From positions 248,001 to 312,000 of IMG/VR virus record IMGVR_UViG_3300036766_002289: a stretch of 64,000 nucleotides of DNA; one strand, 5' to 3'. The position numbers and the translations under genes are program-made. Under the pieces are notes generated by a model, which was not told the origin of the DNA, did not search any database, and saw only the letters and a list, made by a program, of their open reading frames with translations. Shown here one piece after another: positions 23,054 to 32,042 of this stretch. How positions within the stretch are numbered: the stretch's first letter is position 1; every line of letters starts with the position of its first letter.

Positions 23054-25083
23054 ATAGTGGTAATAAGAGCATTTTTTAGTCCAACCGAAATCCTAATTGG
23101 AGTAATAAATGATCCGAGAACCCAATGGCGGGAATTACCGCAAAGGTAAGGCTTTGACTTACCAAGGTGTATTAGATGAAATTGCATCTAACCTTGAGAA
23201 CGCAAATGCATGGGCGGTTCATAAAAATTGGAGCAATGCAGCTAAGTACAGTCTTAAAGCAGAAGCTTTAATTGAATTACTTGAAGTCCATAATTGTGGT
23301 TCTATTGGTGGGTTTGATAATGGCCAAAAACCGAATTCAACTTTAGAAGAACGGTGGGAGTGGCTAGACGGCGGCAATCCAAACTAGGGTAAATATAATG
23401 AATGTCCTTGGTAAATTAGATAAAGTCCTTGAAAAGAAATGGGCAGAGATTAATGAAAAATGGGAAGAAATTGAGGCAAAGGATGGAAACCCTTACGAAT
23501 TATGGTATAGTTTCCTTGAAACTCTAGGACATTATAAGACCGTAACTTATGAATCTCATTGGCATCCCGAATATGGTGTTCCTGCCCTTATTAAGGCTCT
23601 TTTTGACGTAGTGAATAGTGACAAACTAGTATATGCTATTGATTTTGATACTGGTAGTAATGCGAGTGAGGTACTATTCTTTGACCGTGAGGAACTACAT
23701 GAAGCCCTTAAATGTGTTTAATCAAACTGATGAAGAATTAGAACAAAGACTCAAGGACCATAAGCGCAAGATGTGGCAAATGCTCTTGGTTTTTATTGTC
23801 GTAATGACTCTTAATGTTCTATTTGTTTTAGGCATTGCTTGCTATGGTCCCGCCTTACCTAGTGTGCAGATTCTCATTTCTACTCCCCTTTGCGTTATTA
23901 ATTGCTTGTCTATTTGGTGGTTAGGCTTAGGCGGGAGATGGCAATGAAATGGGAATTGCCTTGGAGATATCCTGAATGGCTTTATATTGCAATGGCAATT
24001 GCTTTCATGATTGGTTGGTATTTAGGAGGCACTAAATGATTCAGCCTAATTTTGGATATTTTGATATCAGCGGTGGAAGATTGGTAATTAGTTTCTATTA
24101 TCCAGATGAAACTGGTGCTACCAAAAGAGAAGAATTAACGGTACTTAAGAATCATATTGAAGTCACTGAACTTTGTATTAAATTGAACGCAATGCTTCCT
24201 TTGATGGCTCAAGCGTCGGCGCGATTTGAAAAGGGTGCATAATGGACGATATTGCTCTTTATGAAATTCTTGTTCCAACCGTTATGAATAAGAAGCCTGT
24301 TAGGACACGGCACCACAGGCAATGGGATAAATACGTTCAAAATATAAGTGGTGGTTTAACCATCCTTAAACCAAATAAGGGGAAATGGGTTTCTCCTAAA
24401 TCTAAAGAGTTGTATGAAGAACGGAGTATCCCCGTTCGTATTGCCTGCACCAGACAGGAAATTGACAAGATTATTGATTTCACTATTAAGCATTACAATC
24501 AGCTTGCGGTCATGGCCTACAAGCTTAGCACCGAGGTAATTATCAAACATAGGGACTAAGATGAAAGATTGGTTAAATACTTTTGAATATTTGGGAAGCC
24601 ATTCTGCAAATGGGCAGATTATATCTTCTTGGCAAAAGGTTTTCCCTAATGAATATCGTATTTGTTATCACACTTATGAAAATGAATACGGCGGGAAGTC
24701 GATAATCGCGGTAGATGTATTACCTGAAATTGGTGAATCAGAAGGGATTTATCACAAACGGTCCCCAAGTTTGAGTTTTTTTGCCACTGGCTTCGAGGAA
24801 TTTGAAGAACTAGAAAACAAGATTAAAAGGGAGATTGTTCCAACTCTGAAAAAGTGGGCAATTAAAACACTATGAGAAAGAAATATTGGAATGATTGAAC
24901 CAACAGAATTTGATGCAGAGAACCCATTTTTTCGCATTAAAGAGTGGAAATTTGCGGAAGATTGTGTTGCCCAAATCGTGGAAGATAAATTCGGTCGTCT
25001 TGGCACTGATTATAGGCTTTTTGACGGTAATCGTTGGCTATATGTTCCCATTGAAGTATTCAATCTTTTCCTAAAACTTGGCA

Positions 25084-25551
25084 ATGCACGAAAACCATAA
25101 AAAAGAACAATACTTCTTTAATGATGAAACCATCCAAAAGCTAGCAGACTTTGCTAGTCAATTCGAGAATCCGTGCTGTCTCTGCACCCCCACCGTTGGC
25201 GTTGAACTAGAAAAACGTGGCATCCAAGTCACCACTTTAGATACCGACGAACGCTTTTCTAATCTAAAAGGCTTTATCAAATACGACCTCTACAGACCTA
25301 TTGCACTAGACAAGAAATTTGGTATAATTCTCTGCGACCCACCGTTCAACATCGTCAAACTGTCCCAATTGTTCACTGCAATACGTATGTTAAGTGCAGG
25401 GTTTGAACAGCCACTATGGATCAGTCACCCAGAAGAACGAAAATACGATGTAATGGCGACTTTTTTCTGGTTTAAGCTGAAAGAAACAGGATTCTTCCCA
25501 CAATACCAGATACCCCAAGAACATATTCAATTTTATGGAAATATTTTGTGA
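25084..25551 (+). CDS. N6-adenine-MTase-like (EEF1AKMT1/Efm5-type) methyltransferase
   Basis: QYFF..ET...CLCTPTV...LDTDERF...FIKYDLYRP...LCDPPF. Confidence 0.7.
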   Translation: MHENHKKEQYFFNDETIQKLADFASQFENPCCLCTPTVGVELEKRGIQVTTLDTDERFSNLKGFIKYDLYRPIALDKKFGIILCDPPFNIVKLSQLFTAIRMLSAGFEQPLWISHPEERKYDVMATFFWFKLKETGFFPQYQIPQEHIQFYGNIL

Positions 25552-26786
25552 AAATTGAATTTCTAAAACTATATAATTATGCCAAACAATGTTGCAAGCA
25601 TAAATGATACATTATACTTATAAATTCAGGTTATATCCAAACGCTGACCAGCAGAAACGTCTCAGCCAGCACTTCGGCTGTTGCCGTTTTGTGTATAACC
25701 ACTTCCTTGCTCAACGTAAAGATGCTTACCTTGCTAACGAGAAATCACCGAATTATTATCAACAGGCTGGTGATTTAACTAAGTTGAAGAATGAAAAAGA
25801 ATGGTTGTATGATGCCAACAGTCAAGTTCTACAATTTGAATTAAAATGTCTGCAAGCCGCGTATAATAATTTCTTTGAGAGAAGGGCGAAGTTGCCAAAG
25901 TTTCATAATAAAAAGAACAAACAGAGTTTTACAATACCACAGCATGTGGGCATTAAGAACGATAGACTTTACTTCCCTAAATTCAAGGACGGCATAAAGA
26001 TTAAACTTCATCGTGAGATAGAAGGAGTGATTAAACATGCTACATTAAGTAGAAATTGTGCGGGTCAATATTTTGTGGCTGTTCTTGTTAAACGAGACAT
26101 TGAACAATTGTTAGGAAATAATAAAGAAATTGGTCTGGATTTAGGTATTAATGCACTCGTTACTTGTTCGGATGGAAAATCCTACAAAAACATTCGTCCA
26201 TATAGGAATTTGGAACACCGATTGCGAACATTAAGTAAGAATCTCCACCGAAAAAAATTGGGTAGCAAGAATCGTGAGCGAGCTAGGAAGATATTGGCTA
26301 AGTGCCATACAAAGATAGTAAATATTCGTAATAACCATTTGCACAAAGTATCCAAAAATATCATTGGCGATAACCAAGTCATCGTTTTGGAGAATTTGAA
26401 TATAGATGGAATGTTGCGAAACCACTGTCTTGCTAAATCTATTGCTGATGTATCATTTTCTGAATTGGTTAGACAAATTGAATATAAGGCAAATTGGTAT
26501 GGCAGGACAATAATTAAAATAGACAGATGGTTCCCATCTAGTAAAACTTGTTCAGAGTGTGGTTATGTTATGGATAACTTGCCTTTGAGTGTTAGAGAAT
26601 GGGAGTGTCCTCAGTGTCAAATAAAACATGATCGTGATAAGAATGCGTCCATCAATATATTGAATGAAGGAAAAAGAACTGTAGGAATTACAGGGATAGC
26701 GTCTGGACTTAATGTAAGACCTAAGAGTGATCTTGGGCAATCAAGGACGAAGGACGAAGCCACGCCATCTTAGGGCGGCAATTCAC
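25537..26786 (+). mobile_element. solo tnpB element (IS200/IS605 family, no tnpA)
   Basis: Follows TTTAT (25532-25536). Right end GAAGCCACGCC-ATCTTAG-GGCGGCAATTCAC has a subterminal hairpin and ends in TCAC. Confidence 0.75.
25604..26773 (+). CDS. tnpB: RNA-guided endonuclease TnpB
   Basis: YKFRLYP HTH; RuvC residues IGLDLG, VLENL, HDRDKNA intact; zinc ribbon CSECG/CPQC. Confidence 0.95.
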   Translation: MIHYTYKFRLYPNADQQKRLSQHFGCCRFVYNHFLAQRKDAYLANEKSPNYYQQAGDLTKLKNEKEWLYDANSQVLQFELKCLQAAYNNFFERRAKLPKFHNKKNKQSFTIPQHVGIKNDRLYFPKFKDGIKIKLHREIEGVIKHATLSRNCAGQYFVAVLVKRDIEQLLGNNKEIGLDLGINALVTCSDGKSYKNIRPYRNLEHRLRTLSKNLHRKKLGSKNRERARKILAKCHTKIVNIRNNHLHKVSKNIIGDNQVIVLENLNIDGMLRNHCLAKSIADVSFSELVRQIEYKANWYGRTIIKIDRWFPSSKTCSECGYVMDNLPLSVREWECPQCQIKHDRDKNASINILNEGKRTVGITGIASGLNVRPKSDLGQSRTKDEATPS

Positions 26787-26797
26787 GGAAATACACA

Positions 26798-27511
26798 ATG
26801 AGCGCAACCGCATATAAACTGACCCACCATTTCACTGAGAAACACCTTACAATGTTAAGGGAATTCTTATCCTATGAGGTAAGATACCCAAAAGAATTCC
26901 CAATCCAAAAAGATTCTAATGGCTTCCTAATCCAAGCTGGCCCCTTCTCCACCCTACACTGGAGTCGCCAGGTGGAATGGCCTTGGGCTGTTCTTAATGC
27001 AGACCTTAAAAAGTCCCACGTTGCTCTTGATATCGGCAGTGGTCAATCAGTTTTCAAGTTCTTGGTTGCAGATAAGTGTAAGCGGTTAACCACTTTAGAT
27101 CATGACTCTAAGACTGTAATTGAAACAGGTTTTTCAGCTAGGCAATTAGGATTTAAGAATATTATTCCTGTGGATGGGGATGCTAGGAAGTTGCCTTTTA
27201 AGGATAATACATTTGATCGTGTATTCCTGATATCGGTCATGGAGCATATGCCTAGTGGTCATATTAAGGCGGTAAAAGAGTTAAAAAGGGTATTGAAGCC
27301 AGGTGGTATTGGGTCGATATCGTTTGATATTGCGGTGAGTGGGCATAGTGATATTGACTTCCATGTAAATATCAAACAGGCATGGAATATCATGAAGGAA
27401 TTAGGGGTGGAACGAGATGATAACCTATTAACGAATAGTGCTACAGTAACACTGAGAGATTTAGGTGGTTTGTCCATTACAGCGGTATTGGTTTCATATA
27501 AGAAGGATTAA
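26798..27511 (+). CDS. class I SAM-dependent methyltransferase
   Basis: ALDIGSG...GDARKLPFKDNTFD...SVMEH...RVLKPGG. Confidence 0.9.
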   Translation: MSATAYKLTHHFTEKHLTMLREFLSYEVRYPKEFPIQKDSNGFLIQAGPFSTLHWSRQVEWPWAVLNADLKKSHVALDIGSGQSVFKFLVADKCKRLTTLDHDSKTVIETGFSARQLGFKNIIPVDGDARKLPFKDNTFDRVFLISVMEHMPSGHIKAVKELKRVLKPGGIGSISFDIAVSGHSDIDFHVNIKQAWNIMKELGVERDDNLLTNSATVTLRDLGGLSITAVLVSYKKD

Positions 27512-29462
27512 ATCATGGACACAGTAACGTTTACTAAGGACGAAGTTAAAGAAATTTACGAGTGGATTGATGCTATGTCAGGTGGCAATCCAGAAAATGG
27601 TTTTATGTGGGATGGGACTGATGATCCTAAACACCCACAGATTTCTGCATTGGTTAAAGTATTTAAGTGTATTGGGCGACGTATCCCAGAAAGTTGCGAA
27701 CCATGCAAAAAATAAGAATTGAACCTAGTGTATATGCTGGGTTTTTGGATATATTTGTGAATGATGAATTTTTCGCTAATTACGGAAATGAAAAATTTTC
27801 TTTTGCTCCTGATTCTGACCTTATTGAACTTGATACTCTTAAAGAAATCATTAAACAACTAGGAGATTGATATGCAAGGTATCCGTATTCGTCATGGAAT
27901 GCTCTTAAAAACCTTAGCTGAAAAGCTAAATCGGTTTCCATCGTCTGTCCGTCGCTCCCTAAAGCGTATGGGATATAGCGTCATTAGAGGTAAAGTTTGG
28001 CTACGAGGACAATTCATAAGGAGATACTAATGGAGATTTCTATTGGTGATTATGGTCGCATGATGTTTGAAGAGATGACTTCCGCAAAAAGTGGCTGTCT
28101 TCATTGGGATAGTATCCGCGATGAAGCTAAACCATTGGTGCATAAGCTTTTAGAACTTAACAATAAGATGAAGAATGCACCATATCAAATCGTAGGCATT
28201 AAAGAAAATGGGAAGAAGGTATTATCGAAAGCCAAGCGTATAGAAAAGGCTCAAGTTCAAATGTGGGGATATAAGGCTTGCGTGCTTAAGGAAGGCGATT
28301 ATGTGTGGTTGAATGACAATAATGACCATGAGATGTATATTCGTCAAGATGACCCTGTAAAAGTTATTGATATCACCAAGAAAGGTATTTACTTGGCGAT
28401 GCATGACATTATTGAGCGAATTAACATAGATGAAAACATATTGCTGGCACCTGCTGATTTTCATGGAAAAGAAGAATCTTACACATCTGATGAATATTGG
28501 CTGAAACAAGCAGATGCTCTTGGAATATAGGAGTCATTATGTGGGATTGTCACGAACACCGAGACGAATTGTGGATTAGTAACAGCTGCACAGTTTACCA
28601 TAAAGAACATGGTCAATTGTGTTGGTGGGAAGTTCATTGGGACTGTATTATTTATCATCCTATTCAGTTTAAGGACAAAACGGCAGCAGCAAAGTGGATC
28701 GGTGAAGGGTGTATTGCGGATATTCAAGAAGGTTTGTCACGTCTTCAGGTTGGGTTTTCTTGCGAAGGGTTTAGCAAACGTGAATATTATCGCGGATAGC
28801 TTAGTTGTACCGAGGTTGACATGAACACCAAATATCCAGAACTTGATAAGGCAGTTGACTATGTTCTCCGTGTGACTCTTGGCAAAATTGCTGAGTCAGC
28901 GGAATTTGCTGACCAGCCAGAGATGCCATATAAGGCTCAGTATATTCTGGAAGAACTCATTAAGAAGTTAAAGGAGCGCGTATGATCCAGATATCCATAC
29001 ATGAAAATGACAGTATGAGCGCAGATAAGTTAAAGCCAGGTCAGTGGGGAGTCTTGACGGAAGGACATGACGGTGTTCCATCAGGGACTCTTTGCTATAT
29101 GGCTTGGGGTGGTTTTGCAGCCCCAGATAAGGGAAGTTTGCAATTCCCTTTCAGGGGAACTTGGGCATGTAAAACAGAGGTGTATATGGTACGTCATTTA
29201 AGGACTGGCGAAGTTATTAGTGGACGAATGGAATGATTAAGGGAGAACAAATGCACATTAGGATCAATCTTAATGAAGACGGCACGGCTACATACTTTAG
29301 GTGGCTAGACGATGAAGAGGACTATGACTTCAGGAATCCCCTTCCATCGTATCTTGCCTTGAAAGCTATTAGCCAAGGTGCTACTGCTGATATTACTGCT
29401 TTAGACCCCGATGACAGTGACCGAGTTTTTGAAGGTAGCATTAAATTCTATGGAGGCTAAAA

Positions 29463-31232: not shown

Positions 31233-32042
31233 TTAGATTAAGACAGCTAATCTAAATGCCTTTAATCCTTTATATCCTGATTTTTTAAGTACAAAACTGA
31301 CAGTGCTGTGGTGAATGTGCCGTAATTGACAAATCTCGTTAATTGTCTTGCCTGTCGTCAATAATTTGAGTATCTCCTGATGGAGACGTGTTGCTCGCTC
31401 GAAACGATTGAGATGACTTAGGTTTATTCTTGACCATTTACGTTCCAAATAAGGAAGATGAAGGGCTATGCCAGTTTGTTTTAGGAATTTGACTGCTATG
31501 CTATTAGCAAAATTGACGACTGCATAACCTTTAGTGTTAATTTTGGCCACAGGGCATTTAATACCCAAATGAGAATGTAATCTATGACTCATAAGGTTCA
31601 AGTTGGAAAGCCAACTACTATGAATTTTAATTGTTATAAAGGAATCTGGTCGTCCGCCTGATTGGGCACGGATAGAGCCGTCACCATCTATAAATCCAAT
31701 TAAAAGAGGCCAAAATAAGTCTTTGTTGATTTTACTAAGGTCAGGCGGCTCATAAGTTTTACGGCAAGACATATTGAATTTTTTAGATATATTGGTAACT
31801 AATGGGTCTGAGAAGGCAGCACTAATTTGAGGATACGATTTACCATTGCACTTAATAGTTCTATAATGAAAACTATTATCATACCCGACGTATTTGAGGA
31901 AGGTTTTTAGGTGGGCTTCATCCTTGATAGACAATGAAACGCAAAGACGATTGCCTTTGAAATGGCCGTCTGCCAATAAGAAACCTATCCAATAGTAAGA
32001 TATTGGGGACTCGTTTAACAGTGAATGTAATTTTGATTTCAT
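31233..32042 (-). CDS. LAGLIDADG homing endonuclease
   Basis: Two motifs, YWIGFLLADG and LIGFIDGDG; C-terminal HTH. Confidence 0.9.
   Translation of the reverse strand: MKSKLHSLLNESPISYYWIGFLLADGHFKGNRLCVSLSIKDEAHLKTFLKYVGYDNSFHYRTIKCNGKSYPQISAAFSDPLVTNISKKFNMSCRKTYEPPDLSKINKDLFWPLLIGFIDGDGSIRAQSGGRPDSFITIKIHSSWLSNLNLMSHRLHSHLGIKCPVAKINTKGYAVVNFANSIAVKFLKQTGIALHLPYLERKWSRINLSHLNRFERATRLHQEILKLLTTGKTINEICQLRHIHHSTVSFVLKKSGYKGLKAFRLAVLI

What the first reader, a model, noticed from the sequence alone, without database searches (positions are those of the whole stretch)
25528..26802. Solo TnpB with a reconstructable empty site and a recoded target copy: RNA-guided homing without transposase
Seen: joining TTTAT (ends 25536) to 26787 (after the right-end TCAC) gives in-frame CAA TTT TAT GGA AAT ACA CAA TGA, whose TGA overlaps the next ATG (ATGA at 26798). 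The occupied allele repeats GGAAATA at 25537-25543 and then diverges, so the host gene still ends properly (GNIL instead of GNTQ). No tnpA or obvious left-end hairpin is present, and RuvC residues are intact. Known: TnpB guides come from the sequence 3' of the right end and cut the empty site next to a TAM; IS200/IS605 insertion makes no target duplication. Inference: TAM TTTAT, guide GGAAATACACAATGAG, own allele protected by mismatches after nt 7, spreading by homing between phages.
Basis: partly seen in the sequence, partly recalled or inferred. Interest (0 to 1): 0.65.

Follow-up and report, generated by a model that had tools for sequence, protein, structure and literature searches.

The report
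Solo TnpB element, empty site confirmed
A 1,250-base element that encodes an RNA-guided nuclease (TnpB) but no transposase sits between two methyltransferase genes of a giant phage; a 95%-identical phage from another sediment sample carries exactly the predicted uninterrupted site, and the element's decayed ends suggest, without proving, that it now spreads by RNA-guided homing rather than transposition.

Summary
TTTAT (25532-25536), GGAAATA at 25537-25543 and 26787-26793, and the right end ...TTCAC (ending 26786) are all present. A 6,595-nt contig from an independent sediment metagenome (run X2, about 95% identical) joins 25536 directly to 26787. It skips exactly 1,250 nt, with 7 ambiguous letters and nothing in between, so the empty allele exists.

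Relatives confirm the right-end boundary: 8 of 8 lose similarity right after GTTCAC. They also support the TAM, with TTTAT flush against the left end in 7 independent insertions.

TnpB is full length, with its RuvC D/E/D residues and zinc-finger cysteines intact. The omegaRNA scaffold is conserved, with compensatory base changes. The 390-kb record holds no tnpA, no second copy and no other target.

The right-end hairpin is also eroded. The element is therefore probably immobile by TnpA. A TAM plus 7 nt of target abutting a truncated left end cannot come from a canonical IS200/IS605 insertion. I read it as a repair or recombination junction between empty-site DNA and the element's interior, though a plain deletion is a live rival.

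Homing is plausible, has precedent in plasmids, and is untested here. This is a new member of a known kind, of moderate interest.

The parts
25078..25551 (+). N6-adenine methyltransferase gene (host gene). Its last codons (GGA AAT ATT TTG TGA) are supplied by the junction and the element's left end.
   Evidence: PF10237, E = 1.2e-18. Homologues conserve ...F/Y-G-N and then vary (alignment A1).
25532..25536 (+). TTTAT, the transposon-adjacent motif (TAM) immediately 5' of the insertion.
   Evidence: TTTAT lies flush with the left end in L009, L010, L012, L013, L072, L100 and L105. The X2 joint starts right after it.
25537..25543 (+). GGAAATA, the left copy of the 7-nt repeat. It is identical to the first 7 nt of the target and guide template.
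   Evidence: 'both = 7' in the X2 joint.
25537..25603 (+). Left-end remnant of 67 nt. It is the inner part of the family's left end, with a promoter-like site (GTGAAA, 18 nt, TATAAT at 25548-25577) and a partial ATAATTATGC...GCATAA palindrome. The outer roughly 50 nt, including the TnpA hairpin, are missing.
   Evidence: Alignment A2. L009's left end is 118 nt and folds at -24 kcal/mol, z = -3.9. The window remnant folds at -6.1 kcal/mol, z = -0.8. Promoter scan.
25604..26773 (+). tnpB, 389 aa, intact. It has HTH_OrfB, OrfB_IS605 (RuvC) and Cas12f1-like TNB zinc-finger domains, with D179, E263 and D345 present.
   Evidence: ISDra2 TnpB (8EXA, 8H1J), E = 4e-71 over residues 6-386. Invariant columns of A5.
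26610..26786 (+). OmegaRNA (reRNA) scaffold region overlapping the 3' end of tnpB. Stems are conserved with compensatory changes. The invariant AAAAGAAC (26672-26679) is a candidate pseudoknot partner of the terminal UUC.
   Evidence: Consensus fold of A4: 40 pairs, 11 with changes on both sides. 96.8% of cells are paired, against 32-46% when partners are slid. The pseudoknot is proposed by analogy with ISDra2 (PMC10097598).
26759..26779 (+). Eroded right-end hairpin (stem 4 of the omegaRNA, which is also the TnpA-binding hairpin). It is a 4-bp core, perhaps 6 bp with a bulge, against 9 bp in relatives, and has a 4-nt deletion in its 3' arm.
   Evidence: Alignment A3. Folds.
26782..26786 (+). 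TTCAC, the right-end terminus and cleavage motif.
   Evidence: Eight relatives are conserved up to GTTCAC and unrelated beyond it. Most of the 56 further loci share this terminus.
26787..26802 (+). The 16 nt templating the guide (GGAAATACACAATGAG). This is the target sequence in the empty allele. It covers the old stop codon of the upstream gene and the start codon of the next gene.
   Evidence: Position relative to the right end. Guide length by analogy with ISDra2 (PMC8612924, PMC10097598). No other TAM-plus-target site exists in the 390-kb record.
26798..27511 (+). Class I SAM-dependent methyltransferase gene. In the empty allele it overlaps the upstream gene through ATGA.
   Evidence: PF08241, PF13649. 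86% identical orthologue in L002.

Best explanation
This is a degenerate, non-autonomous IS200/IS605-family element of the solo-tnpB (IS1341-like) kind. It lies in a 390-kb phage genome at a canonical TTTAT TAM, inside the last codons of an N6-adenine methyltransferase gene.

Shown:
- The element is 1,250 nt. Its right end is exact.
- Its TnpB reading frame, catalytic residues and omegaRNA scaffold are preserved.
- The guide template matches the junction of an empty allele that really exists in a roughly 95% identical phage.
- The left-end hairpin is gone and the right-end hairpin is eroded.
- The record holds no tnpA.

Inferred:
1. An ancestor received a canonical TnpA-catalysed insertion at TTTAT|GGAAATAC. 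Autonomous relatives with tnpA do occur on large viral contigs.
2. The present allele arose when empty-site DNA, cut back to TAM + 7 nt, was joined to the interior of the left end at an A/T-rich microhomology. This is the product expected if a TnpB cut is repaired by homologous copying from the right flank, through the right end and tnpB, and the left side is then closed by end joining (abortive gap repair).
3. That product was kept because it restores the conserved G-N codons and a stop codon of the methyltransferase.
4. The element can no longer be moved by TnpA. It persists, and can spread to empty alleles of co-infecting relatives, by omegaRNA-guided cleavage followed by homologous repair (non-restorative homing).
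5. Its own left junction is spared because only 7 TAM-proximal nucleotides match the guide.
For: - Empty allele with an exact joint.
- Right-end boundary.
- TAM.
- TnpB integrity.
- OmegaRNA covariation, in which the window takes part (for example CUGUAG/UUACAG against CCGUAG/CUACGG).
- Left-end truncation and loss of the hairpin.
- Right-end hairpin deletion.
- No tnpA, no second copy, no other target in the record.
- Autonomous relatives with a Y1 tnpA: L020 (281-kb contig) and L011 (75-kb viral contig).
- A canonical insertion would replace G-N-x-x* with a read-through of more than 40 aa. This uses L009's left end as a proxy. N155 is nearly invariant in homologues.
- The 7-nt repeat lies flush with both TAM and right end, P about 1e-4.
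- TnpB cuts 15-21 bp from the TAM (PMC8612924), so a cut empty site keeps the TAM-proximal target bases.
- TnpA-independent, TnpB-dependent spread is shown for plasmids (PMC11870625). It is discussed for co-infecting phages (PMC13565253).
Against: - Nothing shows that TnpB or the omegaRNA is expressed or active.
- Stem 4 of the omegaRNA is shortened, which could impair the ribonucleoprotein.
- Only one occupied allele is known. X1 and the IMG/VR record are the same source, so no co-conversion tract or second occupied background could be examined.
- The canonical full-left-end allele at this site was not found.
- Relatives' left ends carry GG followed by A/T-rich sequence near the same register (L009 has ATGGCGGATAAATGTGAAAA). 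Part or all of GGAAATA could therefore derive from the left end, and the allele could be a plain internal deletion.
- None of 56 other distinct relatives shows a TAM plus partial-target duplication, so the proposed repair product is not recurrent.
- The X2 letters over guide positions 8-16 were not seen.
- The original contig is 590 kb and only 390 kb could be searched for tnpA.
Confidence: 0.55

Rival explanations
1. This is a decaying IS remnant. A canonical TnpA insertion at TTTAT|GGAAATAC was followed by a simple internal deletion of the outer roughly 50 nt of the left end, through a 2-nt AT microhomology. The deletion happened to bring a left-end GGAAAT into frame, and selection kept it because it rescues the methyltransferase C-terminus. 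On this view the 7-nt identity to the target is chance plus selection, and TnpB played no part in forming the junction. TnpB may or may not still home.
For: Without gaps, the window's TATGG......TGTGAAAA lines up in register with L009's AATGG......TGTGAAAA. L009 has GGATAAAT where the window has GGAAATAT. L021 has AATAATTTGTGA where the window has AATATTTTGTGA. Close relatives L019 and L104 also have short left ends without hairpins, so left-end decay is common in this sub-lineage. No other relative shows a target duplication.
Against: It needs the left-end interior to match 5-7 nt of the right flank (P about 1e-2 to 1e-4). It also needs the deletion to start exactly at the TAM/left-end boundary. 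No sequenced relative has GGAAATA at that place in its left end.
Confidence: 0.25
2. The 'empty' allele of X2 is secondary. The element was lost from an occupied ancestor by slippage or end joining between the two GGAAATA copies, so the polymorphism reflects deletion and not a naive target.
For: A 7-nt direct repeat flanking 1,243 nt is a possible substrate for such a deletion. The joint has exactly that 7-nt ambiguity.
Against: This does not explain where the repeat came from, or why it is flush with the TAM and the right end. The product restores an ATGA-coupled gene pair of normal appearance. Either way, an X2-type genome offers TAM plus target to the nuclease.
Confidence: 0.1
3. TnpB is retained mainly as a weapon in competition between phages, or as a domesticated function. 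It would cut co-infecting relatives that lack the insertion (marker exclusion or interference) with little or no copying of the element, or serve a regulatory role.
For: The frame and scaffold are intact although both TnpA-binding ends have decayed. A target is present in a related phage. The same phage carries a free-standing LAGLIDADG endonuclease gene at 31233-32042. Interference by phage homing endonucleases is described in the review PMC13565253.
Against: Flanks that are 95% identical would allow homologous repair, so exclusion and homing are not separable here. A purely regulatory, nuclease-dead role is unlikely because D/E/D is intact.
Confidence: 0.1

Closest known systems
ISDra2 (IS200/IS605 family) TnpB-omegaRNA of Deinococcus radiodurans
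   Same: Same domain architecture. Alignable over the full length at E = 4e-71, with RuvC D/E/D and the zinc finger present. The omegaRNA is encoded at the 3' end of tnpB, runs to the right end, and takes its guide from the flank. The TAM is 5 nt and T-rich (TTTAT here, TTGAT in ISDra2). Insertion is 3' of the TAM.
   Different: No tnpA. The left-end hairpin is missing and the right-end hairpin (stem 4) is shortened. Seven nt of target are duplicated next to the TAM, which peel-and-paste insertion does not produce. The element resides in a giant phage, not in a chromosome.
Non-autonomous solo-tnpB elements (IS1341-like) on viral contigs: L009, L010, L012, L013
   Same: TnpB is 67-68% identical. 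They share the right-end terminus GTTCAC, the TAM TTTAT and the inner left end, including the ATAATTATGC palindrome.
   Different: Those copies keep a 118-nt left end with a strong hairpin and a 9-bp right-end hairpin, so TnpA could mobilise them in trans. They show no target duplication.
TnpB gene drive of IS200/IS605 in plasmids, also called 'transposon non-restorative homing'
   Same: The proposed mode of spread is the same: the guide records the insertion site, IS-minus copies are cut, and IS-plus copies win or are copied, without TnpA (PMC11870625; PMC13565253).
   Different: That work was experimental and done in plasmids. Here there is only a natural occupied/empty pair in phages and a junction that may be a repair scar. 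No activity was measured.
Free-standing homing endonuclease genes of T-even phages (Seg and Mob; intronless homing)
   Same: A nuclease gene sits between conserved phage genes. A related phage lacking it carries the cleavable site. Spread is expected during co-infection by repair from the donor (review PMC13565253).
   Different: Target recognition here would be by RNA guide plus TAM, not by protein. Self-protection would come from the insertion itself splitting TAM from target.
Abortive gap repair of cut-and-paste elements (internally deleted P elements and Ac/Ds; cited from my own knowledge, not checked here)
   Same: One side is repaired by homology and the other is closed at a microhomology. 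The result is a terminally or internally truncated copy.
   Different: That is a eukaryotic, transposase-induced break. Applying it to a TnpB cut in a phage is my inference.

Membership tests
TnpB (IS200/IS605-family RNA-guided nuclease) | HTH_OrfB, OrfB_IS605 (RuvC) and C-terminal zinc-finger (TNB) domains | tested here: met
   PF12323, PF01385 and PF07282 all score above their cut-offs.
TnpB (IS200/IS605-family RNA-guided nuclease) | RuvC catalytic D-E-D and CxxC...CxxC present | tested here: met
   D179, E263, D345 and C316/C319/C335/C338 are invariant columns in A5. Alignment to ISDra2 TnpB.
TnpB (IS200/IS605-family RNA-guided nuclease) | Structured omegaRNA encoded at the 3' end of tnpB and ending at the right end | tested here: met
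   40-pair consensus with 11 compensatory pairs. 96.8% paired, against 32-46% for slid controls. The terminal stem is shortened in the window.
TnpB (IS200/IS605-family RNA-guided nuclease) | RNA-guided, TAM-dependent DNA cleavage | not testable with these tools
   Needs biochemistry or an interference assay.
IS200/IS605 insertion sequence (mobile by TnpA) | Y1 (HUH) transposase TnpA in the element or elsewhere in the genome | tested here: not met
   PF01797 gives no match in the 390-kb record, while the control genomes do match. The remaining roughly 200 kb of the original contig could not be searched.
IS200/IS605 insertion sequence (mobile by TnpA) | Subterminal hairpins at both the left and right ends | tested here: not met
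   The left-end remnant has no hairpin (z = -0.8), against L009 (-24 kcal/mol, z = -3.9). The right-end stem is reduced to 4-6 bp by a 4-nt deletion.
IS200/IS605 insertion sequence (mobile by TnpA) | Insertion 3' of a specific penta- or tetranucleotide (the TAM) | tested here: met
   The X2 joint begins right after TTTAT. Seven relatives have the same motif.
IS200/IS605 insertion sequence (mobile by TnpA) | No target-site duplication | tested here: not met
   A 7-nt direct repeat GGAAATA flanks the insert. I read it as secondary, not made by a transposase.
Homing element (non-restorative TnpB homing) | Occupied and empty alleles coexist in related genomes, and the guide matches the empty junction | tested here: met
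   Guide positions 1-7 are confirmed in X2. Positions 8-16 were not read.
Homing element (non-restorative TnpB homing) | Conversion of empty to occupied alleles that depends on the nuclease | not testable with these tools
   Needs co-infection or plasmid-surrogate experiments.

The most novel reading that the evidence does not exclude
The left junction (TAM + 7 nt of target fused to a truncated left end) is a natural scar of TnpA-independent, omegaRNA-guided homing between co-infecting giant phages. The TnpB-cut empty site would have been repaired by copying from the right flank and then closed by end joining. The resulting transposase-dead element now lives purely as an RNA-guided homing gene, a natural intermediate between a transposon and a free-standing homing endonuclease.
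Probability: 0.35. Interest if true: 0.65.

Novelty: new member of a known kind. Interest (0 to 1): 0.45.

Why it matters
TnpB is the ancestor of Cas12, and its natural role is still being worked out. Restorative homing after TnpA excision has been shown in bacteria, and TnpA-independent drive has been shown in plasmids. For phages the idea is only discussed.

This locus offers a clean natural test case:
- an exact occupied/empty pair in 95%-identical giant phages;
- a defined TAM and a defined 16-nt guide;
- an element whose TnpA-binding ends have decayed while its nuclease and guide scaffold have been conserved.

If the nuclease is active, the locus would show that a TnpB element can outlive its transposase as a homing gene in viruses. 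It could also explain why TnpB is so common in phage genomes: 424 GenBank phage records and more than 500 IMG/VR stretches match.

If the nuclease is inactive, this is an ordinary decaying IS remnant.

Tried and rejected
- Megablast of 24000-28500 against GenBank phages gave no match.
- The search for related loci with either methyltransferase in IMG/VR gave no relatives.
- Exact look-up of the TnpB and methyltransferase proteins found only one other contig. It is from the source sample, carries the same occupied arrangement, and its DNA was not retrievable.
- An exact 22-mer of the reconstructed empty junction gave 0 hits in IMG/VR and 0 in JGI metagenome contigs. The empty allele was found only by laying contigs of run X2.
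- The closest protein-level relative phage (L002: N6-methyltransferase 75%, second methyltransferase 86%) is neither empty nor occupied. It carries an unrelated 73-aa ORF between the two genes, so it does not settle the ancestral state.
- I screened 56 distinct relatives for TAM + partial-target duplication and found none. L040 and L050 gave short matches that are A/T-rich or belong to a dispersed repeat, not to the left-end junction.
- The 5'-truncated copies L014 and L015 show no target remnant.
- Rfam gave nothing relevant.
- RNAalifold's long-range GUGA/UCAC helix is invariant and so uninformative. I prefer the ISDra2-like pseudoknot (UUC with the invariant GAA about 110 nt upstream), but this is by analogy only.
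- I considered a transposase-made 7-bp target duplication and rejected it. There is no such transposase, and the family makes no duplication.
- I considered a nuclease-dead regulatory TnpB (TldR-like) and rejected it because D/E/D is intact.
- No structure or complex prediction was run, because sequence-level homology to solved TnpB was already decisive.
Full report
**Context**

The window is bases 248001-312000 of a 390,039-nt IMG/VR virus record. IMG/VR classes it as a 'provirus' and CheckV rates it 98% complete. The protein database records the source contig as 590,099 nt. Neighbouring genes are phage-like: phrog_562 (RNA ligase / tail-fibre attachment catalyst), phrog_1221, and many small ORFs. 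A LAGLIDADG endonuclease gene lies at 31233-32042.

**Checking the observation**

- The N6-adenine methyltransferase gene (25078-25551; PF10237) ends ...CAA TTT TAT GGA AAT ATT TTG TGA.
- tnpB runs from 25604 to 26773. It carries the HTH_OrfB, OrfB_IS605 and Cas12f1-like TNB domains.
- The sequence ...GGCAATTCAC ends at 26786 and is followed by GGAAATACACAATGAGC.
- The ATG of a class I SAM methyltransferase gene is at 26798.
- GGAAATA occurs at 25537-25543 and again at 26787-26793.
- Joining 25536 to 26787 gives ...QFYGNTQ* with an ATGA overlap. The occupied gene ends ...QFYGNIL*. Both proteins are 157 aa.

**The empty site exists**

Five public runs hold parts of the region. I laid the contigs of four of them on 24000-28500.
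- X1, the probable source, covers the whole stretch with no differences.
- X2 is a sediment metagenome from another study. One 6,595-nt contig at depth 16 matches 24144-25536 with 68 differences and 26787-27870 with 53 differences, about 95% identity.
- The two parts of that contig are joined directly: 'skips 1250', 'both = 7', no letters between.

The letters of X2 at guide positions 8-16 were not listed, so I cannot confirm a full 16-nt match. The same contig also lacks window 27871-28028, which corresponds to the 52-aa ORF at 27872-28030.

**Boundaries and TAM from relatives**

TnpB relatives of 67-77% identity were fetched from IMG/VR, GTDB genomes and metagenome assemblies.
- Right end. 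In eight relatives the 3' region is conserved through ...CCC-TTTAGGG-...GGGTAGTTCAC and is unrelated afterwards. The right end of the window's element is therefore 26786, and the 16 nt from 26787 template the guide. Most of 56 more distant viral loci share the terminus GTAGTTCA(C/A).
- TAM. Four full-length solo elements (L009, L010, L012, L013, each in a different flank) start their left end directly after TTTAT. The same holds for L072, L100 and L105. TTTAT resembles the ISDra2 TAM, TTGAT (PMC8612924).

**Integrity of the nuclease and guide scaffold**

The protein aligns over residues 6-386 with ISDra2 TnpB (8EXA, 8H1J) at E = 4e-71. In a 30-sequence alignment, D179, E263, D345 and the four zinc-finger cysteines are invariant.

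The last 177 nt before the right end fold into a consensus of 40 pairs in 7 helices, 11 of them with compensatory changes. On that structure 96.8% of cells are paired, against 32-46% when partners are slid by 1-3 columns. None of 500 shuffles reaches the observed covariation score. The window itself carries compensatory changes, for example CUGUAG/UUACAG where relatives have CCGUAG/CUACGG.

In ISDra2, positions -5 to -3 pair with -103 to -105 to form a pseudoknot (PMC10097598). By that analogy, the terminal UUC could pair with the invariant GAA at 26676-26678. This is an inference.

- Left end. In L009 it is 118 nt from TAM to ATG and holds a strong hairpin (CCCAGTCCC-TTTA-GGGGCTGGG plus an outer stem). 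As DNA it folds at -24 kcal/mol, z = -3.9. The window has only 67 nt, with no significant fold (-6.1 kcal/mol, z = -0.8).
- The window aligns to relatives only from about TGTGAAAA (25546) inward. That retained part contains a promoter-like GTGAAA-18-TATAAT.
- Right end. The hairpin, which is stem 4 of the omegaRNA, has a 4-nt deletion in its 3' arm and substitutions in its 5' arm. This leaves a 4-bp core, or 6 bp with a bulge.
- The record holds no Y1 tnpA (with positive controls), no second tnpB, no second right end, and no other TAM-plus-target site within 3 mismatches.
- Autonomous relatives do exist. L020, on a 281-kb contig with TnpB 75% identical, and L011, on a 75-kb viral contig, both have a divergent Y1 tnpA and a left-end hairpin beyond it.

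**How the junction arose**

A canonical IS200/IS605 insertion places the full left end directly after the TAM and duplicates nothing. Here the TAM is followed by 7 nt of the target and then by the interior of the left end.

From the window's composition, P(GGAAATA) = 1.2e-4, and the repeat is flush with both TTTAT and TTCAC.

My preferred reading:
- An empty-site end that retained TAM + 7 nt was joined to the left-end interior.
- The join probably used an A/T-rich microhomology. L021 has AATAATTTGTGA where the window has AATATTTTGTGA.
- The right side meanwhile is a plain homologous continuation.
- TnpB cuts 15-21 bp from the TAM (PMC8612924), so a cut empty site keeps TAM-proximal target bases.
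- Repair that copies from the right flank through the right end and tnpB, but fails to reach the left flank, would give exactly this product (abortive gap repair).
- Selection would then keep it. With L009's left end as a proxy, a canonical insertion replaces G-N-x-x* with a read-through of more than 40 residues, and N155 is nearly invariant among homologues.

The main rival is a plain internal deletion of the outer left end.
- Without gaps, the window's TATGG is in register with L009's AATGG relative to TGTGAAAA, and L009 has GGATAAAT at that place.
- On that view the 7-nt identity is chance plus selection for the G-N codons.
- Left-end decay is common among the closest relatives. L019 and L104 both have short, hairpin-less left ends.
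- None of 56 other relatives shows a target remnant.

I put the target-derived reading at about 0.5-0.55 and simple deletion at about 0.25.

**Function**

The occupied left junction matches the guide at 10 of 16 positions (1-7 and 13-15). By what is known of TnpB, that should not license cleavage, but this was not tested.

The element has a preserved nuclease and scaffold, a guide that matches an allele present in a 95%-identical phage, and decayed TnpA-binding ends. That fits an element maintained by homing or by interference against relatives lacking it. The mode has been shown for plasmids (PMC11870625). A 2026 review names it 'transposon non-restorative homing', with co-infecting phages as possible targets (PMC13565253). 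No expression or activity data exist for this locus.

**Comparison and novelty**

TnpB genes are common in phages. tblastn finds them in 424 GenBank phage records, 378 of them near full length, and more than 500 IMG/VR stretches match. A solo TnpB in a phage is therefore ordinary.

What this locus adds is an exact natural occupied/empty pair with a defined TAM and guide. It also adds an element whose TnpA-binding ends have decayed while the RNA-guided module is conserved, and a junction that may be a homing scar. I rate it a new member of a known kind, interest 0.45. The scar reading, if proven, would deserve about 0.65.

**Limits**

- X1 and the IMG/VR record are the same source, so only one occupied allele is known.
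- The X2 contig sequence itself could not be fetched.
- Read laying could be called only once.
- About 200 kb of the original contig could not be searched for tnpA.

Noticed in passing
window 27871-28028 (ORF 27872-28030, +): A second presence/absence difference from the X2 phage. The X2 contig skips exactly 158 nt, corresponding to a whole 52-aa basic ORF with only a faint winged-HTH hint (PF13592, E = 0.037). The gap falls at gene boundaries.
   Followed up: partly
window 31233-32042 (-): A free-standing LAGLIDADG_3 endonuclease gene of 269 aa (25.7 bits, cut-off 22.5) lies 4.4 kb downstream. It is another probable homing gene in the same phage.
   Followed up: partly
L002:5468-5689: The nearest protein-level relative phage (Logan SRR21686423) has an unrelated 73-aa ORF between the two methyltransferase genes. 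The ORF has no Pfam or PHROG match and overlaps both neighbours (ATG inside GNVICTH*, and ATGA at its end). The junction between these genes is therefore a hotspot for small gene gain and loss.
   Followed up: partly
L014/L015 (the same loci as L028/L029), IMG/VR 3300020200_000014 and 3300020193_001983: A 5'-truncated tnpB (residues 143-386 only) has a perfectly intact right end and hairpin on two viral contigs. No target remnant is present at the truncation point.
   Followed up: partly
L019, L102, L021, L104 (TnpB 74-77% identical to the window's): The closest relatives also lack a recognisable left-end hairpin. L019, L102 and L021 share a different outer block (AACTATTTAGCAAAAAAA). L102 and L021 share ATTACATT just after the right end. 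This sub-lineage may have a different or decayed left end as a group.
   Followed up: partly
L050:389 and 472, compared with the right flank at 2390: In one viral relative, the first 12 nt of the guide template (TTAAACAATGTT) recur twice upstream, inside a repeated TTTATTAATTAAACAATGTTCGAT unit. That element seems to sit in one copy of a dispersed phage repeat.
   Followed up: no
run X1, 601-nt contig on window 25609-25880: The source sample holds a second tnpB, about 82% identical over 272 nt, with a different upstream sequence. Related elements therefore coexist in that community.
   Followed up: no
whole record: IMG/VR calls the 390-kb record a 'provirus', and the protein database lists a 590,099-nt contig for its proteins. 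Whether this is a giant phage or a trimmed larger contig is unresolved, and it limits the 'no tnpA' statement.
   Followed up: no
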